From positions 186,001-250,000 of the IMG/VR virus record IMGVR_UViG_3300017991_000048: 64,000 nt of DNA; one strand, given 5' to 3'. Made by a program: the position numbers and the translations under genes. This document shows, piece by piece, positions 1 to 60,385 of the stretch (its first letter is position 1; each line of letters starts with the position of its first letter). The notes under the pieces were generated by a model that was given only the letters and a program-made list of their open reading frames with translations, searched no databases and had not been told where the DNA came from.

Positions 1-747
1 AGTTTCTATAAGTTTGTCCACAGCATTTTCCTTAATCACATCTTTCGGAATGTGACGTCCTGGCCATGTTTTCTCAAGCTCGATCAAATCTTCGTATAGA
101 GGGAAGTAATCTACACCATTATTTTCCTCGGCCAATTCCTTACACGCTGTTACCAATATAGCTTTCGATTCGGGTGTGGTTGCAGTGTTCACTGGAGCAA
201 GAGGGGATACCATCAATATGAACGATGTATCGGCTTTCACTGATCGGAGGGTGTTTATTGAATCTTGTATATAACTTTTGCATTCTGGCACCGATAACAT
301 TTTCGCTGTGGTATTGGCTTTCTTAAACCCTCTAGCTGGCACTTGCCAAAAACAATCATCAGCGTCTTGCCAAACTTCTGCCATACCGAAAATGAATATT
401 ATGTTTTGAGCATCAAACATATGCCGCAAAACATTATTGTAAAGCCATCGCCTACGGTCAAAGAAATGCTCTTTTGTGAACGGCATGAGGCCAGCTAATT
501 GTATATCAATATACTGCCCCAAGTAGCTGCGGCAAAACTTTTCATAATCTTCATCGTGAACGACTCCGCCTCGATGATAAATTTTCGTCGCTATCTCTAT
601 TTCACAGTAAATACCGGGCGGAGAATATTTATTGAAGTCGCCTGGGGTTTTCACTACTTTGAGAACCCCATCTAAATGGTTTTCCATCTGTCTTGCTATA
701 CAACTCCCGAACAAAAATAGCTTTGTGTCTTGAAAATCAGTAGCCAT
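1..747 (-). CDS. GSCFA-family (SGNH-like) protein, partial (runs off the window)
   Basis: Not in the ORF track. Hand translation from ATG 747 gives MATDFQDTKLFLFGSCIARQMENHL...IFIFGMAEVW...FILMVSPL...SKAILVTAC...VDYFPLYE, matching GSCFA-family motifs. The frame is open to position 1. Confidence 0.75.
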   Translation of the reverse strand, partial: MATDFQDTKLFLFGSCIARQMENHLDGVLKVVKTPGDFNKYSPPGIYCEIEIATKIYHRGGVVHDEDYEKFCRSYLGQYIDIQLAGLMPFTKEHFFDRRRWLYNNVLRHMFDAQNIIFIFGMAEVWQDADDCFWQVPARGFKKANTTAKMLSVPECKSYIQDSINTLRSVKADTSFILMVSPLAPVNTATTPESKAILVTACKELAEENNGVDYFPLYEDLIELEKTWPGRHIPKDVIKENAVDKLIET

Positions 748-1414
748 ACTTCTTCGCCAGTGTTTTCAGGCCCTCTTGTAGTGGCGCACTCAGACCGCTC
801 AAACTCAGCCCCTCAACAGTGTTTTTCAGATCAGGGTCTGAGTGCCACCATCCTATATTTACAGTGGTCGGGGTACTATCTAATGCTTTCCTTGCGTCAT
901 CCAATGATCTATGGTGCCCTACCAAATCAGCTATCTTTGTCAGTTTTTCAGCACTAAGAGTTTCTAATTGGTATCTAAAATGTGCGTGGTCTTCTATTTG
1001 TTTGTTCCAATCCAGCCAAAACGCGACGGATTTAGATACCTCGTCAGTGTAGTTATGAACACCAAGCGCGTACTCTTCAATCACATCGATGTACCCCTTA
1101 TTTCGTGGGTTCCCGGTAAATAGTTCTCTGCCTACCAGCGACTTTAAAGCTGCCATTGGGTGTCGCACTTGGTGGATAACGATCACGTCTTTCGGAAGTA
1201 CGGGTAGAAAAGGAACGGCGAGCCAAGACGAATCTCCAAGGGTATCAGGCAGAGAAAGGTCCGCACCGGCCTCTAAAGAACCTCTGAACCGCCCTCGTGC
1301 CTCTCCAAGCCCAAACACCGACTCATGCCCACAAGGTATACCAAGATTTGTGAGAAGTTTTGCTATATATCCTGTGCCGCTTCTAGGCACAGCGCATATC
1401 AGAAACCGTTTCAT
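737..1414 (-). CDS. sulfotransferase-fold protein
   Basis: 5'-PAPS loop ICAVPRSGTGY and 3'-PB-like VRHP...S. ATG 1414 makes an ATGA overlap with the upstream stop (track start 1435). Confidence 0.7.
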   Translation of the reverse strand: MKRFLICAVPRSGTGYIAKLLTNLGIPCGHESVFGLGEARGRFRGSLEAGADLSLPDTLGDSSWLAVPFLPVLPKDVIVIHQVRHPMAALKSLVGRELFTGNPRNKGYIDVIEEYALGVHNYTDEVSKSVAFWLDWNKQIEDHAHFRYQLETLSAEKLTKIADLVGHHRSLDDARKALDSTPTTVNIGWWHSDPDLKNTVEGLSLSGLSAPLQEGLKTLAKKYGY

Positions 1415-2133
1415 CCGACTGGACAGATCGCGCAATAAGGGTACTTTTTCCGACCACCGGGTTTCCCTAAAGTTAGTATTATCTCCTGGTGCTTTTCGCT
1501 ATACCACAAATCTTCTACTGAAGTGTCTGAGACACTGCCCAAATCAAACTCGCCAAGAGGGTCTTGACAGCACAATCGCATCTTGCCGTCAAATCCGATG
1601 ATCATGTTTTGCCGACATCCAGCAAAGCAAGGCTTCGAACTTTGACGCCTGATCGCCTCATTCAAAGTCTCTCTGGGGTCATAATGAGTCAGATGATGTA
1701 CACTTCTAAAGGCTACTTTAGCCGACTTGAACAGGCCACCAATGTATTTTCTACGCTTAAAAGCTGCTTGGTCATTTAAAGAGATATTCAATTGATGGAA
1801 ATATGGGTCAATACTCTCCGCTATTTCTGGAGTCAGAATATCTCCATTGCTACATGCTACCACCGGGTCAAAGCCCTTTTCCATTGCATACTTTGCGAAA
1901 TCTGGAAGACGTTTATCAAACAATGGCTCATTGAAGAACTGTAGGACAACCATCTTCCGGTGTCCCATGTCCCAAGCCTGATCTAAGATGTCATACACCA
2001 TCTCAGATGGCATCTCTCCTTTCAGCTTCTCACGCTGAGGGTGGGTCTGACGCAAACAAGTCGGGCACTTTCTGTTACAAACAGATTGCGTTTCAATAAC
2101 TAAGCGTGGAAATTCTCTAATCTTTCGTTCCAT
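1411..2133 (-). CDS. radical SAM protein with SPASM/twitch domain
   Basis: CNRKCPTC (CxxxCxxC), FFNEPL, C-terminal PCFAGC...LCCQD...LGSV...CAICP. TGATG overlap with the upstream gene. Confidence 0.9.
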   Translation of the reverse strand: MERKIREFPRLVIETQSVCNRKCPTCLRQTHPQREKLKGEMPSEMVYDILDQAWDMGHRKMVVLQFFNEPLFDKRLPDFAKYAMEKGFDPVVACSNGDILTPEIAESIDPYFHQLNISLNDQAAFKRRKYIGGLFKSAKVAFRSVHHLTHYDPRETLNEAIRRQSSKPCFAGCRQNMIIGFDGKMRLCCQDPLGEFDLGSVSDTSVEDLWYSEKHQEIILTLGKPGGRKKYPYCAICPVG

Positions 2134-2699
2134 CACTCACCCTTTAGCCACATAACAAAACTGCCGCCTATAGGCATACTATCAACCACCAAGCCGTCGT
2201 AGAATTTCAAAAGGTTTTCCGTGGTCACCTCTTCCCACTCTACACAACCCGGCTCGTACCTTAAGTCTTCCCGTACTTTCCCAAACGTGTGCATATCATC
2301 AACCACAACTATATCATTATGTTTCCGCTCTTTGAATAATTCCAACTCTTTCCACAAAGGAAAGGGAGACTTTTGTATCGCCGGTTTCATTAGACAATAA
2401 TGTGCATCTAAATAGGCAAACACCGGAACGTCAGAGTACACGTCTCTCAACAAGAAGGGTAAGAACGTTGTAGTGCTCCCTCGATGTGACCTTACATTCT
2501 GAAGACCGCCAATCTTTTTCTGTGCAACTTGCCACATACCTTGATCAAGCTCTATAGTTTCGACCGTCTCGAAATGTTTAGCTGCAATTTCTGTCTGAGC
2601 GCCTGTTCCTGTCCCAGTCTCGATAAAGACCTTTATATCTGAATAGTCTTTTTGGCGTTCAGCGATGATACTAAAATGTTTGTCGTTCCAACGTCCCAT
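2133..2699 (-). CDS. class I SAM-dependent methyltransferase-like protein
   Basis: FIETGTGTG, TIELD, AYLDAH, VVVDD. GGAG RBS precedes ATG 2699 (track start 2753). Confidence 0.7.
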   Translation of the reverse strand: MGRWNDKHFSIIAERQKDYSDIKVFIETGTGTGAQTEIAAKHFETVETIELDQGMWQVAQKKIGGLQNVRSHRGSTTTFLPFLLRDVYSDVPVFAYLDAHYCLMKPAIQKSPFPLWKELELFKERKHNDIVVVDDMHTFGKVREDLRYEPGCVEWEEVTTENLLKFYDGLVVDSMPIGGSFVMWLKGE

Positions 2700-2703
2700 G
2701 ATT

Positions 2704-4758
2704 TTACTCCGCAACTGAAAAATGCTTCTGATGGCCAATATATCTACGTACACGTCTGTTTTTGGTTCTTCCGTACTCTTCCGCTACCTCCATCTCGTGC
2801 CAGCGGTGCGTGTCATCAAAAATGAGAGGCACGTCATGTCTGAATAAATCGAGGTGATGTAAAAACCCTCTTCGCCCTCCGTCTTGTTCGGTCAAAGCAT
2901 CCAAAATAATCAGGCTGTACTCTTCCGGTATCTTTATCTTATTTACATCGAACCAAATATGATCGCCATAGTCCTTGAGAGGCGCGTGAATAAAAGTCGC
3001 GTCTTTGGCAAGCATCCATTTCTCATGACACTCTATGGAAACGACATTATAAAATTTGCACAGTTCGGTTGTCCCGATTCCAGTGCCTATCTCTATAATG
3101 GTAGATCCACGAGGGATATTTTCGAGTATCCAATAGAGACACTCCTCTGAAAGCGCGAAGTTGTTGAGATTGCACTTGGCCACCTCTGGTGGAAACTCAC
3201 CAATCTTATACCTCAAAAACTCTTGTTCAGCTTTGTCAGCTTTTGCGAGATTTTCCTTACCCTCAGCAAAGGCTCTATCTTGTGGAGTAATGGATGAACC
3301 CCACCCAGGCTCAGCTTCATGGAAATCAAAGTCAGGCCAATAGGGGCTGTTCTCACCTCCCCTTCTGATTAAATCCAAGCAACAGATAAGCTTTCTCACA
3401 TTTTTAACTGTCACATACAGGCCAAATGGTGAATAGCCCTGATTGTAGATCTTTTGAGTCACGCAGAAATGCCAATCTGATAACATTGGCAAGTTTTTGT
3501 TAAAGTTTTCAAGTTCCCCGTAGACGCTTTTATCAAAAGCCATCAAACACCCTGTAGCGCCTTTGAATTGCACCAGATCATCTATGGTTTTGAAATACCT
3601 TATGTGAGTAAGACGTCCTTCAATAAGGAAGAGTAGATGCTTTTGGCCTTTGTTCATGCCTTCAATGAAAGGGGTGTGCCAGTTGGGGTGTACCGGAAAA
3701 GTGTCATCGTCGAACCAAAACTGATAATCACAGTCTTTGAGCATTTGGAAAGCTTTATGCTTGGAGTGTGAAACCCCCATTCTCTCCTCGTTATAAACAT
3801 AATCAATGTAGCCCAACCTCTCACAGAACTTTTCTTTGTGTCGGGCTTCCGCTGGCTTTGAGTTGTCATCTATTACGACTACCTTAGTTTTATAGTCTGT
3901 AGGCAAGAATTTGTTTAGGTACCTCAACGCATGTTTAAACACTCTCAACCGATTTCTAGTGGTATAGCTTATTCCAATTTTCATATGCTTGTCCTCTATA
4001 TCCTTTATTTGCTTGCGAAGACGTTTGCTACAGTCGCCGTAGGTCGCCCCGATAAGCTTTGTGAAAGCTTCATACGATGCTCGTTTTCCCTCAGGAGACT
4101 TCTTACGCTCTGCTAAAGTGTAAGCTGATCGATGCCGTTGTATTTTACAATCGGCGGGGACGCCGTCTAAATCAAAAGAATATATATACCCACCTGGATT
4201 TGCGATAGTGGCACACCACCAAATGGTATGACCTCGATCATACATCTTTGTAGTAAGGCCGAAATGCCAAACTCCGTAGATGCCAAACCCTTCGTTAAAC
4301 CCTTCGATATCCTTATACGTGTCCTTGTGGAAAGTCATTAGACACGCAGTGACCCCATTAAATACCTCAAGACCGTCCACACGTTTTACGCATTTGAAGT
4401 TTAACCATTTACGCATATAGAGCAGATGTTTTTGCCCTTTATCCATTTCGTCGATAAACGGCTCATGCCACCCCTCACAAATTGGATAACAATCATCGTC
4501 AAACCAAAACTGGTAATCACAGTCCTTGAGTAACTGAAAAGCCTTGTGCTTGGAATGTGGTATACCTAACCACTCTTCGTTGTACGCATATTCAAAACCA
4601 CGGCTGAGTTCAGCGTTTCTGTCACGGTGTACGCTATCACTGTTGTCATCAATAACTACAACTTTTGCGCCTTGAGGTAAAAACTCGCGCACCTTCGTTA
4701 ATGAATATTCAAGAGCATCAGGGCGGTTCCTGGTAGTATAACTTATGCCAATCTTCAT
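2704..4758 (-). CDS. tandem GT2 + GT2 glycosyltransferase with C-terminal methyltransferase domain
   Basis: Two copies of MKIGISYTTRNR...VVVIDDNS...DCDYQFWFDDD (GT-A DxD). C-terminal IEIGTGIGT...SIE...IILDA...IFDDT. Confidence 0.85.
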   Translation of the reverse strand: MKIGISYTTRNRPDALEYSLTKVREFLPQGAKVVVIDDNSDSVHRDRNAELSRGFEYAYNEEWLGIPHSKHKAFQLLKDCDYQFWFDDDCYPICEGWHEPFIDEMDKGQKHLLYMRKWLNFKCVKRVDGLEVFNGVTACLMTFHKDTYKDIEGFNEGFGIYGVWHFGLTTKMYDRGHTIWWCATIANPGGYIYSFDLDGVPADCKIQRHRSAYTLAERKKSPEGKRASYEAFTKLIGATYGDCSKRLRKQIKDIEDKHMKIGISYTTRNRLRVFKHALRYLNKFLPTDYKTKVVVIDDNSKPAEARHKEKFCERLGYIDYVYNEERMGVSHSKHKAFQMLKDCDYQFWFDDDTFPVHPNWHTPFIEGMNKGQKHLLFLIEGRLTHIRYFKTIDDLVQFKGATGCLMAFDKSVYGELENFNKNLPMLSDWHFCVTQKIYNQGYSPFGLYVTVKNVRKLICCLDLIRRGGENSPYWPDFDFHEAEPGWGSSITPQDRAFAEGKENLAKADKAEQEFLRYKIGEFPPEVAKCNLNNFALSEECLYWILENIPRGSTIIEIGTGIGTTELCKFYNVVSIECHEKWMLAKDATFIHAPLKDYGDHIWFDVNKIKIPEEYSLIILDALTEQDGGRRGFLHHLDLFRHDVPLIFDDTHRWHEMEVAEEYGRTKNRRVRRYIGHQKHFSVAE

Positions 4759-5534
4759 ATACTACCCTCTTTTATTTTTTGGGTATCTAGTCGAAAACGC
4801 TGGACACACGAGGCATAACCTTCGCCCACAAACCTTTTAAATGCCTCATGCGCCTCCGTTCTGTTTTTCCAGTTATCAGTGCGATCCTTTTTTGTGAAAG
4901 ATGAACCGCGCCGTTTTGCCTTATAGTCAGCAGGACATCCATTAATGTCAAAAGCATGGATGTAACTTCCAGCGTCAGCAACGGTAGCCACCCACAAAGC
5001 CGAATGACCTTTATCATACATTTTTGTGGTCAGCGCAAAATGCCACATTCCATAAAGAGTAAACCCTTCATGAAACCCCTCAACATCTACATAAGTGTCT
5101 TTATGGAACGTTAGTAGACATCCCGTACAACCGGAGAATCTTTCGAGGTTACCAATGCGAGCTACACATTCAAACTTCATCCATTTGTGCATATAGAGCA
5201 AATGCTTTTGATCACCTTCCATTGCATCAATAAATGGCAGATGCCAGCCTTCGCACATAGGGTAACAATCATCATCAAACCAGAACTGGTAATCGCAATC
5301 TTTAAGCCTCTGAAAGCCTACATTCTTAGAGTGCGGGACACCTAATCGCTTTTCGTTGAACACATACTCAAAGCCATGGCTAAGGTCTGCATTTTTATTA
5401 CGGAATATATCATCGCTATTATCGTCAACAATTACGACTTTTGCCTCTGGGGGCAAAAATTGACGCATCTTCGTTAATACATATTCAAGAGCCTCAGGGC
5501 GGTTCCGGGTAGTATAACTGATTCCTATGCTCAT
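4755..5534 (-). CDS. GT2 family glycosyltransferase
   Basis: ISYTTRNRP, VIVDDNS, FWFDDDC. Close paralog of the first domain of 2704..4758. Confidence 0.85.
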   Translation of the reverse strand: MSIGISYTTRNRPEALEYVLTKMRQFLPPEAKVVIVDDNSDDIFRNKNADLSHGFEYVFNEKRLGVPHSKNVGFQRLKDCDYQFWFDDDCYPMCEGWHLPFIDAMEGDQKHLLYMHKWMKFECVARIGNLERFSGCTGCLLTFHKDTYVDVEGFHEGFTLYGMWHFALTTKMYDKGHSALWVATVADAGSYIHAFDINGCPADYKAKRRGSSFTKKDRTDNWKNRTEAHEAFKRFVGEGYASCVQRFRLDTQKIKEGSI

Positions 5535-5650
5535 GTCTCTTTACTCTCAACAAGAAAAGATGTACCGGCCCAAGAGAAATTCGCATAGGGTAAGAAGTTG
5601 AACTGGGGGTGCTGCTTGTCCTTCTTAAATAATGCCAACTTTTCTGCCAT
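5531..5650 (-). CDS. small hypothetical protein (39 aa)
   Basis: MAEKLALFKKDKQHPQFNFLPYANFSWAGTSFLVESKET*. Starts just after the upstream stop and ends in an ATGA overlap with the GT2 start. Confidence 0.5.
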   Translation of the reverse strand: MAEKLALFKKDKQHPQFNFLPYANFSWAGTSFLVESKET

Positions 5651-5651
5651 T

Positions 5652-6524
5652 TTAGCGACCTAAAGTTCCAGCAGTGTACAACTCACTGGCATCAAGATGA
5701 CTATCCTCTAAGCAATAGGTTTCGTTGATCTCAAAAAGCCGTCCGAGATAAGCCTCTACACCATGAGACGACGGGTGTACGTTATACCACTCCTTTGAGA
5801 ACAACTTCGCATGGTTTACCCACCAAAATGTTCCAGAGTAATGCCACATAGAATCCAACGGTAAAGGGATTCTCGGTTCACAAATTTGGAAAGAACCGGC
5901 ACACGCAAACTGTGAAAGAACCGCTTCAATTAGCTCCATGTTGTGTAGACACAACTCATACATCTTGTCCCGCCAAACTCTGACGGCATCCAAAACAACC
6001 GGGTCATCGTGTGTCACGCCTTTTGTGTGAGCAAAAAATGTGATCTCGTCTTCACGTTCAGATTTAAGCCGTGCTAACGCCTCCGTAAAGCCAACAACTT
6101 CCCGCAGTTCTGGTACGTTGGTGCAACGTATAAATTCAGCTTCAAAAGTGAACGCAGCTTCAACTGTAGCCGGGTCCACTATGCCCTCTCCTGTCATTAT
6201 TATTACAATACGCCGTCCATTGAATATATCTGCATACCCGTTTATTTGCTCAATATTTCTTTTCCACTCATTAGACTTTTGGAAGGCACCGCAGCTATAT
6301 ATAAGGTTTCGCTTCATTAAGGCCGAAGACTCTGTGCGCGGGACTTCAACCTCTGGCCGAACACACGTTAGCCTCTCTATTATTACTGCCTTTCGTTTGA
6401 AGCAACGTTCACAAACTTGAACGCTCTTAGCGTTGGGTTTTATCTTCTTCTCGTAAGTATGCCCACAAGCTTCACATTCAAAGCGAGCATTGGCAGCATA
6501 TAAATCTATGTCATGCAGCGGCAC
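5652..6524 (-). CDS. Zn-ribbon + putative glycosyltransferase-like (HTKG/GxFWW) protein
   Basis: N-terminal CEAC...CERC; FAHTKG, WRDKM, HYSGTFWW, EAYLG. GAGGA RBS before GTG. Confidence 0.5.
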   Translation of the reverse strand: MPLHDIDLYAANARFECEACGHTYEKKIKPNAKSVQVCERCFKRKAVIIERLTCVRPEVEVPRTESSALMKRNLIYSCGAFQKSNEWKRNIEQINGYADIFNGRRIVIIMTGEGIVDPATVEAAFTFEAEFIRCTNVPELREVVGFTEALARLKSEREDEITFFAHTKGVTHDDPVVLDAVRVWRDKMYELCLHNMELIEAVLSQFACAGSFQICEPRIPLPLDSMWHYSGTFWWVNHAKLFSKEWYNVHPSSHGVEAYLGRLFEINETYCLEDSHLDASELYTAGTLGR

Positions 6525-6546
6525 GATTCCTCACCGCTTTCTACAC

Positions 6547-7365
6547 CTATCGGACGCCGAAATTCGTGCCTATATCAACTACATCTAACGATCCTGACAG
6601 GGAAAAGTTGATGCCGCCGACAGCCCCTACAGAGGTCCACGTTGCAGGGGCGCTGCTCGTTCCGACATCCATTGCTTGTTTCACTGACCAAACGTGGTCA
6701 GGGACCGTACCCCCCAGTTTACTCGTTGTCGGAAGATCCTTAAGAATTTCAACATCTTGTCTCAACAAAAATAACTCATCCTGAGTCATAGCCTCAGTGT
6801 GATAAAAGAAGCCTACAATCCAGTCAAAAGTGGAACCATAACTATCCGCTGGAGTTCCCCTTCCTAGAAAAAGATCTTGGCTGGACGGGTTCCCTGCTGT
6901 CCAGGCTGGATTGCCATGATCACGACTATTAATATGAAAAGCGTCTCCAGGGTATAGATCATCATCCACAACTATCGCTGTAAGTTGCAGTTCACAAGCA
7001 ATTATATGGTGAGCAGGTGATACGAATGTAGGGTCGCTAAAATCTACGGGGTCGCTGGACGCTGTTACAGCTTCAACGTCCGCTGTGTATAGACCTGTAA
7101 GTCCCGGAGGAACCGCGCCAAGGTTCGCAGCACGGTAGCCTAAACTGGCATTGTCATGGCAATCAAACAGAGCCGCAGGGGTTGCTTCAAAGTTCGTATG
7201 CTTTCGAACCAAATGAAGCAACCCGACTGTAAACTGCGTGTCAGCCCCCCGGATAGTCGGATCTGCTGTTGAGTAATAGTTGGCGAGATACCCGGTTGAC
7301 GGATGAGGCCTAAGACCCTTATACCCGGCAACTCGTGTTTTCTCTGGGACGGGGATGTAAGTCAT
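6547..7365 (-). CDS. virion/fibre-associated protein, paralog 2 (possibly LamG/ConA-like)
   Basis: 272 aa, aligns end to end with 7368..8186. GFFYHTEAMTQDEL resembles the LamG C-terminal strand/helix. Confidence 0.45.
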   Translation of the reverse strand: MTYIPVPEKTRVAGYKGLRPHPSTGYLANYYSTADPTIRGADTQFTVGLLHLVRKHTNFEATPAALFDCHDNASLGYRAANLGAVPPGLTGLYTADVEAVTASSDPVDFSDPTFVSPAHHIIACELQLTAIVVDDDLYPGDAFHINSRDHGNPAWTAGNPSSQDLFLGRGTPADSYGSTFDWIVGFFYHTEAMTQDELFLLRQDVEILKDLPTTSKLGGTVPDHVWSVKQAMDVGTSSAPATWTSVGAVGGINFSLSGSLDVVDIGTNFGVR

Positions 7366-7367
7366 CT

Positions 7368-8186
7368 CTATCGGACCCCAAAAGCTGTTCCAATATCCAC
7401 CACATCAAGTGCGCCGGTTAGACTGAACGCCAAACCGCCTATCGCACCCAAAGAGATCCATGTTGAAGGAGCGCTCCCGACCCCTACATCCATCGCTTGT
7501 TTCACTGACCAAACATGAGCGGGAACAATACCTCCCAATGGGCTTGACGTTGGAAGATCTTTCAGAATCTCGATGTCCTGTCTGAGTGTAAACAATTCAT
7601 CCTGCGTCATAGCGTCAGTATGATAAAAAAAGCCTACAATCCAGTCAAAAGTTGATCCATACCCGTCAGTCGGAGTGCCTCGCCCCAAGTAAAGATTTTC
7701 GGCTGACGGGTTGCCAGCCGACCAAATCGGCTCTCCGTGGTTTCGGCTGTTTATATGAAAAGCGTCTCCAGGAGTAGGGTCGTCGTCCACAATAATCGCC
7801 GTAAGTTGTAACTCGCAAGCATACAAATGATGAGCAGGGGAAGAAAACGCTGGATCACTTATGTCCACCGGATCAGCATTCTGGTTTACAGCCTCTACGT
7901 CTGATGAATAATACCCGTTCATTCCTCCCGGCACCGCCGCTCCAATAAGATGAGCGCGGTAACCGAAAAAGGTATCGTGGCAATCAAATAAAGCGGACGG
8001 CACTGGCTCATAATTGGTTTGCTTTCTAACTAAATGGAGCATCCCCACTGTAAACTTAGTTTCCAGTCCGTGCAACGGCGGATCAGCATTGACATAATAA
8101 TTAGCCATGTACCCCGTGGTGGGGTTCGGCTTCAGACCTTTGTACCCGGCAACTCGTGTCGATTCCGTTACTGGTATATGAGTCAT
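7368..8186 (-). CDS. virion/fibre-associated protein, paralog 1 (possibly LamG/ConA-like)
   Basis: 272 aa paralog of 6547..7365. GGGAG RBS. Confidence 0.45.
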   Translation of the reverse strand: MTHIPVTESTRVAGYKGLKPNPTTGYMANYYVNADPPLHGLETKFTVGMLHLVRKQTNYEPVPSALFDCHDTFFGYRAHLIGAAVPGGMNGYYSSDVEAVNQNADPVDISDPAFSSPAHHLYACELQLTAIIVDDDPTPGDAFHINSRNHGEPIWSAGNPSAENLYLGRGTPTDGYGSTFDWIVGFFYHTDAMTQDELFTLRQDIEILKDLPTSSPLGGIVPAHVWSVKQAMDVGVGSAPSTWISLGAIGGLAFSLTGALDVVDIGTAFGVR

Positions 8187-8196
8187 TTACATCTCC

Positions 8197-9852
8197 CTAA
8201 ATAACGTGCCAAGCGCCATTTATGAACTGGAAGTCTACCGCGACGAGGCCAATGCCAATGGTGAAGCTTGCCACCAAAGCTCCAGCTACCGGGTCTTCTA
8301 TATTATTACCGTTACCGGAAATGGTTATTACAGTTGTGTTTGTCGTAACATTCTTAACAGAGAAATGATCACCGCTACTGGGTGTTGCCGGGGCATTAAT
8401 AGTAAACGTGCCGCCGCTAGGATCATAAGCTTCTCTATAGCCGATCTTTGCGGTGCCTGTTGTGGTACGCACGGCACTTGGTTGCAGTTCCCCTACGTAA
8501 CGCCACCCGTTATAAGCAGCTATTCGTAATAGTCCTTGAACCTGAGCCGGGTGATCCAAGTCTGTAACCATAAGACCACCGAAAGCGACATCCGTGGGAT
8601 CGTCGTCTTGCGGTACGATACGCAATGCCGGGTAAGCAGGGTTGGTGAAATCGCCTTCGGCCTCTACGCCTATGCCTGTTGCGGTACTACCCTTGACACC
8701 ATATCTGACACCTGTTCCATAGACTCCTATGCTACTCGCCCCAGTGCCTATACCATGGACACCATGAAAACCTGTGCCCTGGACACCATAGCCTATTGAT
8801 CCACCAGCTACACCTTCAACGCCTGGAGTATTACCACTCGCTCCGCCTGTACCTTTGACACCAATACCAGTGGTGCCACCACCTTGTCCTTCAACACCAG
8901 TACCATTGCCTGTAGTACCGCCTAATCCGTAAACGCCCTGGCTTGCAGGAGTTGGTGCCGGGTCTGCAAAATCACCGCCGCCTATGACACCAATTCCGTT
9001 ACTGCCACCGCCCCTACCTTTGACTCCGGTGCCCGCTGCTAGGCCGCGCCCTTCAACACCGACTTTATTACTCGCGCCCTGGCCGAAAACACCCTGACCG
9101 TCAGCCGTGGGGCTAGGGACTCCTCCGCTTCCCCCAATAACACCAATACCAAGGCTGGCACCGCCTGCGCCTATGACTCCAGTACCGTTACCAGCGGATT
9201 CACCTAAAATAGCATTATACCCAGATCCGCATGTGGCGTACACGGCTCTGGCGGTTGTCGATTGTGCCCGCACACCGATGCCAGCACCAGTACCAACGCC
9301 TTGCACACCTATGCCGTTAGTTCCGCCTGTGCCCTTGACGCCAACGCCGTTAGACCCGCCGCCCGTGCCTTCAACACCAGATCCGGTACCAGCACCGATT
9401 CCTTCAACACCGATACCATTTGTAACACCGCCTGTACCTTTCAGTCCGGTGGAATTGCTGCTGCCGCCTGTACCCTCAACTGCAATATTCGCGTCATCAG
9501 GCGTAAAAGTCTGTTTCTTAGTCCAGGTGTTCGCAACATCTAACTGAACGCCGCCTGCAATTGACACCTGAGTCTTGCCACCAACATCAGCCGCTGTGAC
9601 ACCAGGACCCACGAAATTCATAGCGGATCGTTGAGTTAACGGGGTGCCTTCATCCTCAACTGTAGTGTACCCACCAGCTATGGGGGTTTGCCATTCATAT
9701 TCAGTAGCGCTGGTAGCTGTGGGAACCTGCCCTGCTGTGGGAGGGGCAGCGGTTTTACTGGATACCGGATCTCCAGTGGTGGCTAATTCGGTAGCACCAT
9801 ACTGTCCGGGATCGGGTTGTTCTTTACTGGCCTGATTATAGCGTGTGGTCAT
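8197..9852 (-). CDS. Gly-rich tail fibre-like protein
   Basis: Many G(V/I)xGxG repeats, the fibre motif ANTWTKKQTF, and a C-terminal DPSGGTFTINAPATPSSGD domain of the kind seen in phage fibres. GGGAG RBS favours ATG 9852. Confidence 0.65.
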   Translation of the reverse strand: MTTRYNQASKEQPDPGQYGATELATTGDPVSSKTAAPPTAGQVPTATSATEYEWQTPIAGGYTTVEDEGTPLTQRSAMNFVGPGVTAADVGGKTQVSIAGGVQLDVANTWTKKQTFTPDDANIAVEGTGGSSNSTGLKGTGGVTNGIGVEGIGAGTGSGVEGTGGGSNGVGVKGTGGTNGIGVQGVGTGAGIGVRAQSTTARAVYATCGSGYNAILGESAGNGTGVIGAGGASLGIGVIGGSGGVPSPTADGQGVFGQGASNKVGVEGRGLAAGTGVKGRGGGSNGIGVIGGGDFADPAPTPASQGVYGLGGTTGNGTGVEGQGGGTTGIGVKGTGGASGNTPGVEGVAGGSIGYGVQGTGFHGVHGIGTGASSIGVYGTGVRYGVKGSTATGIGVEAEGDFTNPAYPALRIVPQDDDPTDVAFGGLMVTDLDHPAQVQGLLRIAAYNGWRYVGELQPSAVRTTTGTAKIGYREAYDPSGGTFTINAPATPSSGDHFSVKNVTTNTTVITISGNGNNIEDPVAGALVASFTIGIGLVAVDFQFINGAWHVI

Positions 9853-9894
9853 GTTATCACTCCCACACATAGGGAATAATAAATGGAATTCCGC

Positions 9895-10314
9895 TTAAAT
9901 CTGGGCAGATTCTAATGAACTGTTATCAGGGTTGAAAGTTATTCGGTTAACCCGCATGAAGGAATCACCGGTCAAAACGCCCCGATCGACGTGAATTAGC
10001 TCATAATTAGACGCCTGAAGCCCCACTAAAAGCACCTCGTGGGCCGCTTCTGGCTTCCCTTGGCCGCACGTAAAAAAGTCCACCGCCGCGTAATTGTGTT
10101 CAGGCCAAGTGTGGATAGATAAATGGGATTCCTCGATAACCACCACACCGCTGACGCCTTGGGGCTTAAAAGGGTGGAACACAGAGGCTACAACCTTACA
10201 GTTTGCGGCGACGGCAGCCTGTTCCATTAGATTCTGAATCTGAGGGATATCGTTAAGTAAGGATTTATTACATCCTATGTACTCGACCAGAAGATGTCTG
10301 CCCCGCGTATCCAA
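9895..10314 (-). CDS. speD: S-adenosylmethionine decarboxylase proenzyme (pyruvoyl-dependent)
   Basis: GRHLL, HPFKPQGVSGVVVIEESHLSIHTWPEHNYAAVDFFTCG with the E/SH self-cleavage site. TTG start with GGAG RBS. Confidence 0.95.
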   Translation of the reverse strand: MDTRGRHLLVEYIGCNKSLLNDIPQIQNLMEQAAVAANCKVVASVFHPFKPQGVSGVVVIEESHLSIHTWPEHNYAAVDFFTCGQGKPEAAHEVLLVGLQASNYELIHVDRGVLTGDSFMRVNRITFNPDNSSLESAQI

Positions 10315-24520: not shown

Positions 24521-27500
24521 TCATACTTCCGTATAAGCCCTATACGTTATAGTGAATACACCCAAGTTCAGAACTTCCATCGAAGCCACGGTAATATCAT
24601 TAGCCCCTGTCTGGCCTCGAATTACATAACTTACCGCGTAAACATGATCCTCAGGATTATCCGGAGGTGTTCCAGAGCCCAACAATGACAAGACTATATG
24701 ATTTGCCGTTCGACGGAGCCGTTCAGCCTCATACTCACTGGGCAAAAACCCTTCCGCCGCAAGCGTGGCGTCGTCGGAGTATCCCATAATCACAGCGCCA
24801 CCAGAACCAATTATGTAAGCTTGATTATCCGCCGAACACACGAGAGCTAAAGTGCTCGAAAGGGTCATCGCCTCATCGTCTTGAAAGACCCCCTTATGCT
24901 CTGTCTCAAGACCACCGCCGTCAGTTGTAGGTGACCCTACAGGATTGCTCAAAATGTAAGCCAGATTGCCACCAAGATCGAGAGACTTCACAGCCGACTC
25001 TCCGGTGGTCGTTTTGGCATATGTTGAAAGAACCGACTCTCGGAGCTTTTGACTGCCGTCTGTGTAAGCCATCAGCGCCATGGGCAACACATTAAACTGA
25101 ACGCCTGTGCTATCGTTGATCGCTGCGTCCACATTCGACTGGGCCACATCTTCTCCGATGAGCTTCTTGTTCAAATCGAGAGACACATTGTTACGGATGA
25201 TTGGATCGCTCTTATCTTTAGAGGCTCCCTGTTCCAACTGGACCGTAGTCTCGATAGCAATTGAGTTCAAAACCGCCTGTTTGACAAGCACGTCAGCAGT
25301 CACATGCCGTTTGTTATTAATTATGTCTTGTAGTTGCTGGATGAGGTCATTGATTACATAAGTGACGATGAAGTTTTCATCATGCACATAGTCAACTGAC
25401 ACCTCTTGGCCATTGGCAATCTGGGACGCTGAAGTCCTCACAATTCGAGCCGGGGTTGTCGCTGTGCCCTCAATAATCTCAAAATCAGGCGCTGCGGCTG
25501 TAGGCCCGTCATACTCAACGGTCCGCTGCTCATTATACACGCGGAGTGTTGCCGTGTTGACACCAATAGAGCTTAGAGGCTCCTGCTCAAACCCTATAAG
25601 CACGTGAAGCTCATCATTGACTTGAATAGTATCACCACTTGGAATACCGCCCGATGGAGTAATCGCCACGTAGTTTTGGGCAATTGTGCTCTCCCCGTCC
25701 AAAAGAGGGTCATCTGTCTTATATAGTTGGTAGTGGGTACTTGGGTCTAATGCTCCTGATACCTCTCCTACGACAGAAACCACACGACGCACCGGCTGAA
25801 GCGTCATATAAAACCGATTGACAACCTGGAATCGATAGTCCGCAAAGATTATATCGTCGATCATTGTCACAGGCTGAGGGATACTCGTATCGATCTGAAA
25901 GGTCTGATAGTCTAAAATCGCCACACCGGTTAGGTCATAATCAGCCCCTACGGTGGCGTTACGTACCCCAAGCCCCTGAGAAGGATTGTTCAAAATCTCA
26001 ATTATAGGAGTCGTGGGGGTTACACGAGAGTCCAGAACACGGAAAATCAAATTAGTAAGGTCGATAATCTGGCACTGGGTATCGCGAGCTACATCAAATG
26101 TGAAAGCAAAAGTGTCTTGGACCTGTCTTTCCTGGACTCCCTGAATCCAAACATCAACCTTACCTCCAATGTGCTTTTTCCGCACATCGTCATAATCTCG
26201 CATCATTAAATCGTCGCCGCTTTTGACAATCTTATTCTTTATGACCCCGATTTTGGCGGCGGCAGTTGCGGCGTAGCCCGTCTCAGTTCCAGTATCAACA
26301 GAAGCAAATGCCAGTATGGAGCGAGAGGCTAAGTTTGCGTTGGATTCCTGGTCATCTCCAAAGACGGTGGCTGACTCATTAATAGCCTGGAGCCCACTGA
26401 TTCCTACCAATGTTGTGATAGATCCAGCCGGGACATTTCCTGCTGAACCCGCTGCTTCCGCTATAATGGAAACTCGTAGCTCGTAGCGTCTGGCGTCAAA
26501 GTTATAATAAGCCTCAGCATTGTCAGCGGGGAGTACAAAAGAGCCGCCAATTCTAAAACGTTGTGCCGTGACGCCTGTCTCTTCATCCGCCGACGATACT
26601 GCAAAAGATCCCGCTGGCACCGTTATATCAGTACTTGGCCGGGTCGCGGTATAAAGAGTCAGTGTCCCAGTAGCTTGTCGGCCTGCCAGTCGTGTCAAAT
26701 TGACGTTAGCTGCCAACTTATCAAACTGCTGGTCAATCAATGACTGTACGGACGAATCGTTTGTGTAGCCGAGAGCCGCTTTGAGCGCCTGCTTATAAGC
26801 ACTGCTACCAACAGGGTCCGAAACCCCATCGCCACCTACGTTATCAATAGCGAGCAATGTCAGGAAACTCTGGCTCCGATGGACGAAATCCAGCAAGAAC
26901 CAGATACGCTCAGCTTCCGACGCAAACGGGTCAATGTTTACATCTCTGGAAATCGAACCGGGAATCAGAGAGATTTCAGCATTAACTCTTAGAACCGCAT
27001 TCACGTAATCTGTAACAATTTGGGCTTGAGTCCTACCCGGTAAATCCCGGATCGTTGTGTCGATAACCAACGGAGATCCGAGAACCTCTTGTGAGTACGG
27101 AGTCTCTATCTCTGCGTTTATCGTGGAATCCCAATAAACCCCCGTCGTCACGTAATAAAGAGGGTCTGAGTCTGGGACACTGATAAACTGGTCCGTATTA
27201 ATGATCCCAGTCCCACCGGCTCTGTCGTGCGTAAAGACCAGAAACTCGTTGAACTCAAAGTTTTGAATAACGCTCGTAAACCTCAGACGACCCGCCAGGG
27301 CTGCATTATCATGGTAAGCATCCAGGCGTACTTCTAACTCATTACCGAACTCGTCTTCCTCAGAAAGCCTCAGACGCAAGTTCTTAGAAGCGCTCACTTC
27401 CCACTCGGCTATATCATCATAAGCCGTAATATCATCTTCTTCATACTCAGTGGGGCTCGTTATGGGCTTTTCATTGATCTTGTAATACCCGCTCGTACCA

Positions 27501-60346: not shown

Positions 60347-60385
60347 AATCAATAGCTCCTACTCGTCAATTAAACCAAAGGATAT

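What the first reader, a model, noticed from the sequence alone, without database searches (positions are those of the whole stretch)
1..6524. Glycosylation, methylation, sulfation and radical-SAM cluster continuing from the tail-fibre genes
Seen: seven enzyme-like genes (HTKG GT-like, GT2, GT2-GT2-MTase, MTase, radical SAM/SPASM, sulfotransferase, GSCFA) with overlapping or near-abutting starts and stops, 22 bp after the fibre-module genes, with no obvious terminator between. Known: some phages and giant viruses glycosylate virion proteins with their own glycosyltransferases. Inference: a late pathway that builds a methylated/sulfated glycan on fibres or capsid, or modifies the host surface. 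This enzyme combination in a phage tail operon is unusual.
Basis: partly seen in the sequence, partly recalled or inferred. Interest (0 to 1): 0.75.

Follow-up and report, generated by a model that had tools for sequence, protein, structure and literature searches.

The report
Jumbo-phage gene cluster for decorated glycans
A 398-kb sediment phage carries, right after its baseplate and fibre genes, a tightly packed set of soluble enzymes that most likely builds a methylated, sulfated deoxy-sugar glycan, probably on its own fibrous virion proteins; the kind of cluster is known in phages and giant viruses, but this enzyme mix is unusual and its target is unproven.

Summary
The seven genes are real and mostly correctly named. 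From the fibre side they are: a zinc-ribbon plus GT-A-fold transferase (DUF8361-like), a GT2, a GT2-GT2 protein with a possible MTase tail, a small MTase, a BtrN-like radical-SAM enzyme, a sulfotransferase and a GSCFA/SGNH protein.

The window cuts the cluster. It runs on for 3.7 kb, with a second sulfotransferase, a 228-aa unknown, an RmlC-like cupin, an NDP-sugar SDR and a bona fide RmlD. That makes 14 abutting ORFs at the 3' end of a 65-kb co-directional block.

No enzyme has a membrane helix. The 398-kb genome lacks RmlA, APS kinase, integrase, and every known starter enzyme for DNA glycosylation.

Relatives of the GT2 domain are phage-specific. They often sit in head or tail modules, and include Cheoctovirus mycobacteriophage GTs. 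A second GT/MTase/sulfotransferase cluster follows a 2,267-aa GXT collagen-like protein.

Best reading (about 0.5): cytoplasmic O-glycosylation of fibrous virion proteins with a decorated 6-deoxyhexose glycan. Remodelling of host surface glycan remains a serious rival.

The 22-bp spacer holds a copy of the genome's recurrent promoter-like motif, so "continuing late operon" is not secure.

This is a new variant of a known kind, of moderate interest.

The parts
5652..6524 (-). 290-aa protein: N-terminal CxxC...CxxC zinc ribbon plus a DUF8361-like GT-A-fold domain with the conserved HTKG motif. Probably a 6-deoxyhexosyl (RgpF/WsaF-like) transferase. First gene of the cluster.
   Evidence: The zinc-ribbon hits are weak. 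Atlas matches are to DUF8361, RgpF and WsaF clusters, mostly viral. There are 1445 representative homologs, and H, K and G of HTKG are conserved. The AF2 model has pLDDT 92.6. It matches GT-A folds: VIA Z 12.1 to GlcAT-P, Foldseek E 9e-5 to DPMS. Family members are fused to sulfotransferases, MTases and GTs.
6541..6547 (-). GGTGTAG: a core copy of the genome's recurrent upstream (promoter-like) motif. It overlaps the TAG stop of the 272-aa gene by one base and lies 23 nt before the GTG start of the 290-aa gene.
   Evidence: The core is 13-fold enriched in noncoding DNA. It usually lies 15-16 nt before start codons. This is the only noncoding copy in the window, and its flanks fit poorly (PWM score 7.8, training range 8.8-22.1).
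5531..5650 (-). 39-aa ORF that fills the apparent 117-bp gap. Its ATG lies 1 nt after the upstream stop, and its TGA overlaps the GT2 start (ATGA).
   Evidence: Read from the sequence. JGI's gene caller also called it. Function unknown.
4755..5534 (-). 259-aa single-domain GT2 (GT-A) glycosyltransferase, a paralog of the two GT domains of the next gene.
   Evidence: Pfam GT2 E 5e-10; phrog_2456 and phrog_1579 E about 1e-27. It is 59% identical to domain 1 and 38% to domain 2 of the 684-aa protein. The FDDD motif is invariant. It is 32% identical to the N-terminal domain of Cheoctovirus Eish gp106 (E 4e-27).
2704..4758 (-). 684-aa protein: two tandem GT2 domains (1-258, 259-520) and a C-terminal domain (about 520-684) with a GxGxG motif, possibly a SAM methyltransferase.
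   Evidence: Pfam gives two GT2 stretches. AF2 gives D1 pLDDT about 90, D2 about 75 and D3 below 35. Foldseek best matches are two-domain GT-A enzymes: K4CP E 2e-13, heparosan synthase, COLGALT1 and ppGalNAc-Ts. For D3 there is only a weak MTase hit, 3d2l at E 0.06, and no Pfam hit.
2133..2699 (-). 188-aa (206 aa from GTG 2753) small class-I SAM methyltransferase-like protein.
   Evidence: Hits to Methyltransf_25, Methyltransf_11 and RrnaAD at E 1e-4 to 1e-3, below the cut-offs. It has the ETGTGTG motif. Gene callers start it at 2699.
1411..2133 (-). 240-aa radical-SAM enzyme with a C-terminal SPASM/twitch auxiliary-cluster domain, BtrN-like. Probably a sugar C-H oxidising or epimerising enzyme.
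   Evidence: Pfam Radical_SAM and SPASM. It aligns over its full length to BtrN (4m7t, residues 9-238, E 4e-9). CxxxCxxC lies at 19-26, and Cys 169, 173, 188, 189, 234 and 237 are present.
737..1414 (-). 225-aa PAPS-type sulfotransferase.
   Evidence: Atlas feature score 0.98 to sulfotransferase clusters, and structural TM up to 0.77 to Sulfotransfer_3/1 families. It has the PRSGTGY 5'-phosphosulfate loop. Its 69 homologs lie in bacterial polysaccharide loci and in phages.
1..747 (-). GSCFA-family protein (253 aa; its last 4 codons lie before the window start). Likely an SGNH-type acyl esterase or transferase.
   Evidence: Pfam GSCFA E 6.5e-20. The role is inferred from my recollection that GSCFA belongs to the SGNH clan.

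The cluster continues off-window at genome 182316-185993: Sulfotransfer_4 (214 aa, E 7e-19), a 228-aa unknown, an RmlC-like cupin, a 345-aa SDR, and RmlD (TIGR01214, 294 bits, above the cut-off of 224).
6547..8186 (-). Two tandem 272-aa paralogs (72.5% identical) just upstream of the cluster. Function unknown. They may be fibre-associated and are candidate acceptors or adaptors.
   Evidence: There are no hits in Pfam, PHROGs, PDB or cultured phages.
8197..9870 (-). 557-aa Gly-rich (23% G, 18% S+T) fibre-like protein with a Ser/Thr/Pro-rich N-terminal stretch (residues 27-56). Candidate glycan acceptor.
   Evidence: There is no homolog with a known function.

Best explanation
The cluster is a self-contained, cytoplasmic glycan-building and glycan-decorating pathway of a virulent 398-kb phage.

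Proposed mechanism (inferred):
1. Host NDP-glucose is converted to an NDP-6-deoxy-L-hexose, L-rhamnose or a close relative. The enzymes are the off-window SDR, the RmlC-like cupin and RmlD.
2. The DUF8361-type GT-A enzyme and the three paralogous GT2 domains add sugars one after another to a cytoplasmic acceptor.
3. The glycan is then tailored by O-methylation (the small MTase and perhaps domain 3 of the 684-aa protein), by sulfation with host PAPS (two sulfotransferases), by radical-SAM oxidation or epimerisation of a sugar carbon (BtrN-like enzyme), and perhaps by acylation or de-acylation (GSCFA).

The most likely acceptors are Ser/Thr residues of the phage's own fibrous virion proteins: the Gly-rich fibre proteins encoded just upstream and the 2,267-aa GXT collagen-like protein elsewhere in the genome. 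Virions would then leave the cell with a decorated glycan coat on fibres or fibrils.

Shown: gene content, folds, motifs, synteny, and the absence of alternative pathway parts. Inferred: the sugar identity, the order of steps, and the acceptor.
For: 1. Enzyme identities:
- GT2 domains with an invariant FDDD motif.
- A GT-A fold for the 290-aa protein.
- RmlD at equivalog level, 294 bits against a cut-off of 224.
- An RmlC-like cupin and an SDR.
- A BtrN-like radical-SAM enzyme.
- Two sulfotransferases with PAPS loops.
- GSCFA.

2. Fusions of the DUF8361 domain link these activities on one substrate. They join it to Sulfotransfer_2 (P0087 and P0090, 53% and 48% identical), to MTases and to GT2/GT8. 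In 80 IMG/VR loci the family sits with NDP-sugar SDRs (35 loci), MTases (21) and GT2s (19).

3. All 14 products lack membrane helices (maximum KD19 1.43). No flippase, polymerase or priming GT is present.

4. The cluster ends a 65-kb co-directional block. From window 53753 down through the baseplate and fibre genes to the cluster's end, no noncoding gap exceeds 63 bp. GC3 equals that of the fibre genes.

5. Relatives of the GT2 domain are phage-borne and often lie inside virion modules: between Mu_F and protease/MCP, before connector genes, and after Phage_cap_E. Of 403 cultured-phage hits, 366 are mycobacteriophages, for example Cheoctovirus Eish gp106. That genus contains Che8, whose capsid is glycosylated (PMC11256854 and PMC12363180). 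In Corndog the GT cassette lies directly before the major head gene.

6. The same genome has a second, unrelated GT4, MTase x2, sulfotransferase-MTase and GT2-GT2-TPR cluster. It lies directly downstream of a 2,267-aa protein with 422 GxT triplets. The GT2-TPR part resembles the peptide glycosyltransferase SunS (E 3e-18).

7. There is no integrase.
Against: - No glycoprotein has been observed, so the acceptor is pure inference.
- Soluble GTs also build Und-PP-linked glycans at the inner face of the membrane, so the lack of TM helices does not exclude a host lipid-linked acceptor.
- Sulfotransferase relatives lie mainly in bacterial polysaccharide loci.
- The GT2 domain shows no BLASTP similarity to the Che8 GTs gp108-110 and only marginal similarity to Corndog gp37. 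The link to proven virion glycosylation is therefore by genus and cassette position, not by orthology.
- A promoter-like motif of the class found mostly before non-structural genes heads the cluster. This fits expression apart from the fibre genes.
- The fibre identity of the upstream genes is weakly supported.
- RmlA and a clear RmlB are missing, so L-rhamnose is a guess.
Confidence: 0.5

Rival explanations
1. Host-surface remodelling. The soluble enzymes act on the host's lipid-linked or nucleotide-linked precursors. During infection the cell's LPS, capsule or S-layer glycan becomes rhamnosylated, methylated and sulfated. That could block superinfection, or stop progeny from sticking to debris.
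For: - This is the usual reading of the large GT and NDP-sugar gene sets of big cyanomyoviruses (PMC12801897).
- Sulfotransferase homologs P0037 and P0042 lie in bacterial polysaccharide loci next to GT2 and GT4 genes.
- Many O-antigen GTs are soluble.
- The promoter-like motif at the cluster head belongs to the class that dominates the non-structural regions, which would allow early expression.
Against: - The cluster has no flippase, polymerase, priming GT, GtrA/B-type protein or other membrane protein.
- The phage has no integrase, so lysogenic conversion is unlikely.
- Both glyco clusters sit directly behind genes for fibrous proteins, inside the long structural block.
- GT2 relatives lie in head and tail modules of other phages.
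Confidence: 0.25
2. DNA hypermodification. The GT-A enzymes glycosylate a hydroxylated pyrimidine in phage DNA, and the other enzymes tailor that glycan, as in phages with glycosylated 5hmC or 5hoC.
For: Phage GT-A enzymes with an R...DDD motif do hypermodify DNA with varied glycans, and some resemble capsid-glycosylating GTs (bioRxiv 10.1101/2023.12.21.572611). The GT2 domains here share the R...DDD pattern.
Against: All known routes need a ThyA homolog or a C5-MTase plus a TET/5mYOX enzyme to make the hydroxyl handle. The complete 398-kb genome has no match to PF00303, PF12851 or PF00145, while the control genomes do. The cluster lies among structural genes, not replication genes.
Confidence: 0.04
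3. Small-molecule product. The cluster makes a free, decorated (pseudo)oligosaccharide or glycoside, an aminoglycoside-like or signalling compound, rather than modifying a macromolecule.
For: The only solved relative of the radical-SAM enzyme is BtrN, of butirosin (aminoglycoside) biosynthesis. MTases, sulfotransferases and GTs are typical tailoring enzymes of natural-product clusters.
Against: There is no scaffold-forming enzyme such as an inosose synthase, aminotransferase, PKS or NRPS, and no exporter or resistance gene. The same combination of enzyme classes is repeated next to a collagen-like protein. The GT relatives are phage structural-module genes.
Confidence: 0.07

Closest known systems
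Virion O-glycosylation of mycobacteriophages (Che8, Corndog, Myrna; Freeman et al. 2023, as reported in PMC11256854 and PMC12363180)
   Same: - Phage-encoded soluble GT cassettes act in the cytoplasm on the phage's own structural proteins.
- In Corndog the cassette sits inside the structural operon, just before the major head gene.
- The GT2 domain here is homologous to a GT of Cheoctovirus phages: Eish gp106, 32% identity, E 4e-27.
   Different: - There is no detectable similarity to the GTs named as essential there. Che8 gp108-110 give no BLASTP hit and Corndog gp37 is marginal.
- This cluster is far larger. It adds sulfotransferases, a radical-SAM enzyme, GSCFA and its own deoxy-sugar genes.
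- It follows fibre genes, not capsid genes.
- The host and the modification itself are unknown.
Chlorovirus PBCV-1 A064R plus A061L (capsid N-glycan rhamnosyl- and methyl-transferases; PMC9614988)
   Same: - A064R is a 638-aa protein with two GT domains and a C-terminal MTase. The separate 209-aa MTase A061L adds the second methyl to the terminal L-rhamnose. Here a 684-aa GT-GT-(MTase?) protein is directly followed by a 188-aa MTase.
- The virus supplies part of the rhamnose pathway.
- The enzymes are soluble and cytoplasmic.
   Different: - There is no sequence match to A064R-D1, and it is not among the top 50 fold matches.
- Both GT domains here are paralogous GT2 domains, whereas A064R-D2 is a separate GT family.
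- Domain 3 here is not verified as an MTase.

The likeness is one of architecture, probably convergent.
Glycan ('LPS' or cell-wall) gene sets of large cyanomyoviruses (P-SSM2, S-SCSM1, S-SCSM2R; PMC12801897), and the DUF8361-centred clusters in IMG/VR contigs found here
   Same: These are environmental phages with many GTs, NDP-sugar epimerases or dehydratases, RmlC and MTases, and no proven function. The 290-aa protein's family co-occurs with these genes in 80 viral loci.
   Different: - Those sets carry carbamoyltransferases and 2OG oxygenases rather than sulfotransferases and a BtrN-like enzyme.
- They are usually read as host-surface modifiers.
- They are not reported as lying at the end of the fibre genes.
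Bacillus anthracis BclA exosporium nap (collagen-like GXT repeats carrying rhamnose and 2-O-methylated anthrose oligosaccharides; PMC6222408, PMC9614988 ref. 237; the link between repeat and glycan is from my own knowledge)
   Same: A Thr-rich collagen-like fibril protein is encoded beside GT and MTase genes, with a rhamnose pathway in the same genome. The phage's 2,267-aa protein has 422 GxT triplets and is followed by a GT/MTase/sulfotransferase cluster.
   Different: - This is an analogy only, and no homology was tested.
- The collagen-like gene lies 94 kb from the finding.
- Sulfation is not part of the BclA glycan.

Membership tests
Phage virion-protein glycosylation cassette (Che8/Corndog type) | Phage-encoded soluble glycosyltransferases located with or near virion genes | tested here: met
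   There are three GT2 domains plus a GT-A-fold protein with no TM helix. They lie at the end of the baseplate and fibre block.
Phage virion-protein glycosylation cassette (Che8/Corndog type) | Homology to the GTs shown to be needed for capsid glycosylation (Che8 gp110, Corndog gp38 and neighbours) | tested here: not met
   BLASTP against Che8 gp108, gp109 and gp110 gives E of 0.3 or worse. Corndog gp37 gives E 0.005 over 85 aa only, and gp38 was not compared. Homology exists only to another Cheoctovirus GT, Eish gp106.
Phage virion-protein glycosylation cassette (Che8/Corndog type) | Glycans covalently attached to capsid or tail proteins | not testable with these tools
   This needs mass spectrometry or glycan staining of virions or co-expressed proteins.
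A064R/A061L-type multidomain viral glycan transferase | GT-GT-MTase three-domain protein followed by a stand-alone MTase | tested here: inconclusive
   The two GT-A domains are clear. Domain 3 has a GxGxG motif and one weak MTase hit at E 0.06, but no Pfam hit and an AF2 pLDDT below 35. The downstream 188-aa MTase has only sub-threshold Pfam hits.
A064R/A061L-type multidomain viral glycan transferase | Sequence or fold kinship to A064R | tested here: not met
   Neither phmmer nor a profile search hits the A064R-D1 chains in the PDB. It is absent from the top 50 Foldseek matches.
dTDP-L-rhamnose pathway (RmlABCD) | RmlA glucose-1-phosphate thymidylyltransferase | tested here: not met
   PF00483 has no match in the complete genome, while all 14 control genomes match.
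dTDP-L-rhamnose pathway (RmlABCD) | RmlB 4,6-dehydratase | tested here: inconclusive
   The 345-aa extended SDR scores best to GalE (78 bits) and LegB (66 bits). dTDP_gluc_dehyt scores 45.7 bits against a cut-off of 365.
dTDP-L-rhamnose pathway (RmlABCD) | RmlC 3,5-epimerase and RmlD 4-reductase | tested here: met
   RmlD scores 294 bits on TIGR01214, above the cut-off of 224. The RmlC-like cupin scores 59 bits on Pfam dTDP_sugar_isom, above the cut-off of 27, but only 30.5 bits on NCBIfam rmlC, below the cut-off of 155.
BtrN-type radical-SAM (twitch/SPASM) carbohydrate dehydrogenase | CxxxCxxC radical-SAM cluster motif, C-terminal auxiliary-cluster cysteines, and BtrN-like length | tested here: met
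   CNRKCPTC lies at residues 19-26, and Cys 169, 173, 188, 189, 234 and 237 are present. Residues 9-238 align to BtrN 5-235 at E 4e-9, with a SPASM Pfam hit. The substrate and reaction are not testable here.
PAPS-dependent sulfotransferase | Sulfotransferase fold with a 5'-phosphosulfate-binding loop | tested here: met
   The off-window 214-aa protein hits Sulfotransfer_4 at E 7e-19 and has the KTGTT loop. For the in-window 225-aa protein, the atlas score is 0.98, TM is 0.77 and the PRSGTG loop is present, but the Pfam hit is only E 0.11. The 3'-phosphate motif and activity were not tested.
Phage DNA glycosyl-hypermodification pathway | An enzyme that makes the hydroxylated pyrimidine handle (ThyA homolog, or C5-MTase plus TET/5mYOX) | tested here: not met
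   PF00303, PF12851 and PF00145 have no match in the complete genome.
Surface-polysaccharide locus or gtr-type seroconversion module | Membrane components: priming GT, flippase or polymerase, or GtrA/GtrB | tested here: not met
   No product of the 14 ORFs has a hydrophobic 19-residue window above KD 1.43, and there are no such Pfam families. The two small TM proteins after RmlD are 71 and 84 aa and unrelated to these families.

The most novel reading that the evidence does not exclude
The phage coats its fibres and a giant GXT collagen-like 'hair' protein with sulfated, O-methylated 6-deoxyhexose O-glycans, made entirely by its own two enzyme clusters. This would be a BclA-like glycoprotein nap on a bacteriophage, and the first sulfated glycoprotein of a phage virion. 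It might serve adhesion to particles or host glycans, or shield the virion in sediment.
Probability: 0.3. Interest if true: 0.8.

Novelty: new variant of a known kind. Interest (0 to 1): 0.55.

Why it matters
Phage virion glycosylation has been shown experimentally only in a few mycobacteriophages, and there it changes immune recognition. Large glycan gene sets of environmental phages have stayed unexplained for twenty years.

This locus gives a compact, testable case:
- a complete-looking, soluble pathway with rare tailoring chemistry (sulfation and radical-SAM sugar editing);
- obvious candidate acceptors next door;
- an independent second cluster beside a collagen-like protein in the same genome.

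If the acceptor is a virion protein, glycan coats on tailed phages would extend well beyond actinophages, and sulfated glycans would join phage biology. The DUF8361-type GT-A family (about 1,400 representative clusters, mostly viral) would also gain a first functional context.

Tried and rejected
- DNA search of the cluster against cultured phages gave no match.
- Peptide-pattern search of IMG/VR with the 684-aa protein gave none. Word-index homolog searches gave only 5 and 7 distant relatives.
- Sequencing runs: only DNA runs hold the phage, and contigs from four further runs are 100% identical at low depth. This gave no variation and no transcript data.
- Generic sigma-70 promoter and terminator scans gave no more sites than shuffled sequence.
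- The PDB sequence search for the 290-aa protein gave only weak zinc-ribbon matches, and the DUF8361 profile gave only chance-level matches. The 225-aa sulfotransferase, the 272-aa and the 557-aa proteins gave nothing usable.
- tblastn of the 290-aa, 272-aa and 819-aa proteins against cultured phages gave no match.
- AF2 failed on domain 3 of the 684-aa protein. BLASTP of domain 3 against the small MTase was not significant.
- The contigs holding the closest DUF8361 relatives were too short to give context.
- Foreign origin of the cluster, suggested by its lower GC, is rejected. GC3 matches the neighbouring fibre genes.
- A nucleotidyltransferase role for the 290-aa protein, as an RmlA substitute, was considered because GlmU and IspD also match the fold. 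It is kept as a minority option of about 15%. The family's fusions are with GTs, MTases and sulfotransferases, and the nearest predicted structures are RgpF/WsaF-type.
- Enrichment of collagen-like or Gly-rich ORFs next to DUF8361 genes in IMG/VR loci was too weak to use: a few adjacent cases against about one expected.
- No complex prediction was run, because no specific binding claim is made.

Full report
**Where the window lies.** The window is bases 186001-250000 of a 398,071-bp IMG/VR virus record. The record has direct terminal repeats and is estimated complete. It was assembled from a sediment metagenome. The same phage turns up, 100% identical and at low depth, in four other DNA runs, and no RNA run was found.

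All genes of the finding are on the minus strand, so transcription runs from high to low coordinates. The finding sits at the 3' end of a block of 48 co-directional genes (genome 181770-247015). That block includes a baseplate-wedge homolog (window 24521-28018, PHROG E 2e-22), weak tail-fibre and virion-protein hits, and several giant ORFs.

**The observation.** The seven ORFs are there. Pfam, PHROGs and NCBIfam confirm these points:
- GT2 for the 259-aa protein;
- two GT2 stretches in the 684-aa protein;
- Radical_SAM plus SPASM for the 241-aa protein;
- GSCFA for the truncated last gene.

The 232-aa "sulfotransferase" has no Pfam hit. It is nevertheless well supported:
- Language-model score 0.98 and structural TM up to 0.77 to sulfotransferase clusters.
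- A PRSGTGY phosphosulfate loop.
- 69 homologs, some lying beside GT2 and GT4 genes in bacterial polysaccharide loci.

The "HTKG GT-like" 290-aa protein is a zinc ribbon joined to a domain of a large, mostly viral family. The family has 1445 representative clusters and is named DUF8361 in newer Pfam, and the HTKG motif is conserved in it. An AF2 model of that domain (pLDDT 92.6) has a GT-A nucleotide-sugar transferase fold. It is not close to any solved protein: the best matches are GlcAT-P at Z 12.1 and DPMS at E 9e-5.

The small MTase has only sub-threshold hits. Domain 3 of the 684-aa protein is not verified as an MTase.

Gene junctions overlap or abut. The only apparent gap, 117 bp, holds a 39-aa ORF that is translationally coupled to the GT2 gene.

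**The cluster is longer than the finding.** Beyond the window start the same strand encodes, without spacers:
- a Sulfotransfer_4 protein (E 7e-19);
- a 228-aa unknown, possibly a beta-sandwich;
- a 153-aa RmlC-like cupin;
- a 345-aa extended SDR of unclear specificity;
- RmlD at equivalog level (294 bits against a cut-off of 224).

After an 89-bp AT-rich spacer come two small membrane proteins, and then a convergent gene. The unit is therefore 14 ORFs over 10.2 kb. It couples synthesis of a 6-deoxyhexose donor to four GT-A domains and at least five tailoring enzymes.

**What the enzymes say.**
- The 259-aa GT2 is 59% identical to domain 1 and 38% identical to domain 2 of the 684-aa protein. 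All three copies keep the FDDD metal and nucleotide-sugar motif. Three diverged copies fit three different linkages.
- The two-domain model matches bifunctional two-GT-A enzymes (chondroitin polymerase, heparosan synthase, COLGALT1) and polypeptide GalNAc-transferases.
- The radical-SAM enzyme aligns end to end with BtrN, a carbohydrate-oxidising twitch-domain enzyme, and keeps both cysteine sets.
- DUF8361 domains occur fused to carbohydrate sulfotransferases, MTases and GT2/GT8 domains.
- In 80 viral loci, DUF8361 genes are accompanied by NDP-sugar SDRs (35 loci), MTases (21), GT2s (19), 2OG oxygenases and carbamoyltransferases.

The activities in this cluster therefore belong together on one glycan.

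**What is missing.**
- No product has a membrane helix. There is no flippase, polymerase, priming GT or Gtr protein.
- The complete genome lacks RmlA and APS kinase, so NDP-glucose and PAPS must come from the host.
- It lacks an integrase.
- It lacks ThyA homologs, Tet/JBP and C5 DNA methylases. Every known DNA-glycosylation route starts from one of these.

**Evidence on the target.** Relatives of the GT2 domain are few, and all lie on phage contigs. Several lie inside virion modules: between Mu_F and protease/capsid, before connector genes, and after a Phage_cap_E capsid gene. The closest relative (49% identical) sits in another phage glycan cluster with UDP-galactopyranose mutase and an MTase.

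Among cultured phages, 366 of 403 hits are mycobacteriophages. One example is the N-terminal domain of Eish gp106, from the genus Cheoctovirus (32% identity, E 4e-27). Che8 belongs to that genus, and its capsid and tail tube are glycosylated by phage GTs (PMC11256854, PMC12363180). In Corndog the GT cassette lies directly before the major head gene.

The Che8 GTs themselves are not similar to the protein here. The link is therefore suggestive, not orthology.

**A second cluster.** The same genome holds another cluster at 279.6-284.5 kb. It is unrelated in sequence to the first and encodes a GT4, two MTases, a sulfotransferase-like/MTase fusion and a GT2-GT2-TPR protein. Part of the last protein resembles the peptide glycosyltransferase SunS.

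This cluster lies directly downstream of a 2,267-aa protein with 23.5% Gly, 23.4% Thr and 422 GxT triplets, which is collagen-like. Two independent GT/MTase/sulfotransferase sets, each placed behind genes for fibrous proteins, is the strongest internal argument that the acceptors are the phage's own fibrils. The parallel with the rhamnose and methyl-sugar glycans on the GXT repeats of BclA is an analogy from my own knowledge (glycan structure in PMC6222408).

The pairing of a 684-aa GT-GT-(MTase?) protein with a following small MTase mirrors PBCV-1 A064R plus A061L (PMC9614988). There is no detectable homology.

**Transcription.** From window 53753 down to the end of the cluster, no noncoding gap exceeds 63 bp. 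Codon-third-position GC matches the fibre genes. Read-through from the fibre genes is therefore plausible.

However, the genome has a recurrent upstream motif:
- Its core is GGTGTA[AG].
- It is 13-fold enriched in noncoding DNA.
- Its typical distance to the start codon is 15-16 nt.
- It is dense in the non-structural regions.
- It has only 8 noncoding copies in the 171-kb structural block, all in gene orientation, against fewer than one expected by chance.

One of those eight lies in the 22-bp spacer at the head of this cluster (window 6541-6547), with weak flanks. Another, with strong flanks, heads the second cluster. The glyco clusters may therefore have their own promoters of a non-late class. 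This does not contradict virion glycosylation, since enzymes and sugar pools must be ready before the fibres are made. It does weaken the "continuing late operon" claim, and it keeps the host-surface rival alive.

**Verdict.** The cluster is real, coherent and larger than reported.
- Best explanation (about 0.5): cytoplasmic O-glycosylation of fibrous virion proteins with a methylated, sulfated 6-deoxyhexose-containing glycan.
- Rivals: host-surface remodelling (about 0.25), a free small-molecule product (about 0.07) and DNA glycosylation (about 0.04).

The kind of system, phage-encoded glycan clusters and virion glycosylation, is known. The combination and placement here make it a new variant. 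It comes with a concrete and cheap experimental test.

Noticed in passing
genome 279573-292915 (outside the window; L016 5573-18000 and beyond): A second, sequence-unrelated glycosylation cluster: GT4, two MTases, a sulfotransferase-like/MTase fusion, and GT2-GT2-TPR with SunS-like similarity. It lies directly downstream of a 2,267-aa GXT collagen-like protein (422 GxT triplets), with two paralogous small proteins (195 and 340 aa) in between.
   Followed up: partly
window 9895-10314 (-): A bona fide S-adenosylmethionine decarboxylase gene (TIGR03330, 135.6 bits, above the cut-off of 75.65; Pfam E 2e-38). It sits among the fibre-module genes, between the 557-aa Gly-rich protein and small unknown ORFs. 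Its role there is unexplained.
   Followed up: partly
whole genome; e.g. window 6541-6547 (-), genome 284491 (-), 81843 (+), 103136 (-), 152000 (-): A recurrent upstream motif, T-n-C-GGTGTA-A/G-T-A. It is 13-fold enriched in noncoding DNA and mostly lies 15-16 nt before start codons with no Shine-Dalgarno sequence between, which suggests a -10-like element driving leaderless or near-leaderless mRNAs. It is dense at 0-170 kb and 340-398 kb and rare in the structural block.
   Followed up: partly
L002 11770-12226 (-) = genome 181770-182226, just past the cluster's end: Two overlapping small ORFs after RmlD. One is 71 aa with an N-terminal TM helix and a strong RBS. The other is 84 aa with a C-terminal TM helix. 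They may be a lysis or membrane pair. A strong copy of the GGTGTAAT motif lies inside the first ORF.
   Followed up: no
window 5531-5650 (-): A 39-aa ORF translationally coupled between the 290-aa gene and the GT2 gene. One public gene caller also called it. It has no homologs and no known function.
   Followed up: no
window 6547-8186 (-): Two tandem 272-aa paralogs, 72.5% identical, with differences concentrated around residues 70-95. They have no homolog in Pfam, PHROGs, PDB or cultured phages.
   Followed up: partly
proteins P0087, P0090, P0086, P0096, P0107, P0188 (relatives of window 5652-6524): The DUF8361-type GT-A domain occurs fused to Sulfotransfer_2, to MTases and to multi-GT proteins. 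In 80 IMG/VR loci it also neighbours carbamoyltransferases, 2OG oxygenases and peptide deformylase. This is a large, uncharacterised viral glycan toolkit.
   Followed up: partly
L044 12153-19340 and L047 5859-20627 (IMG/VR jumbo-phage contigs of 235 kb and 467 kb): Collagen-like ORFs lie within a few kb of the DUF8361-type GT gene in two other very large phage contigs: one of 2,395 aa in L044 and four smaller ones in L047. Across all 80 loci the association is too weak to call.
   Followed up: no
window 56039-60352 (-) and 62288-63712 (-): A 1,437-aa DNA helicase homolog (PHROG E 1e-81) and a tRNA nucleotidyltransferase (E 2e-57) lie at the upstream end of the same co-directional block. The block therefore mixes replication and RNA genes with structural genes.
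   Followed up: no
L002 479-1732 (-) = genome 170479-171732: A 417-aa protein with a DnaJ J-domain (E 2.7e-7), a phage-encoded co-chaperone candidate.
   Followed up: no
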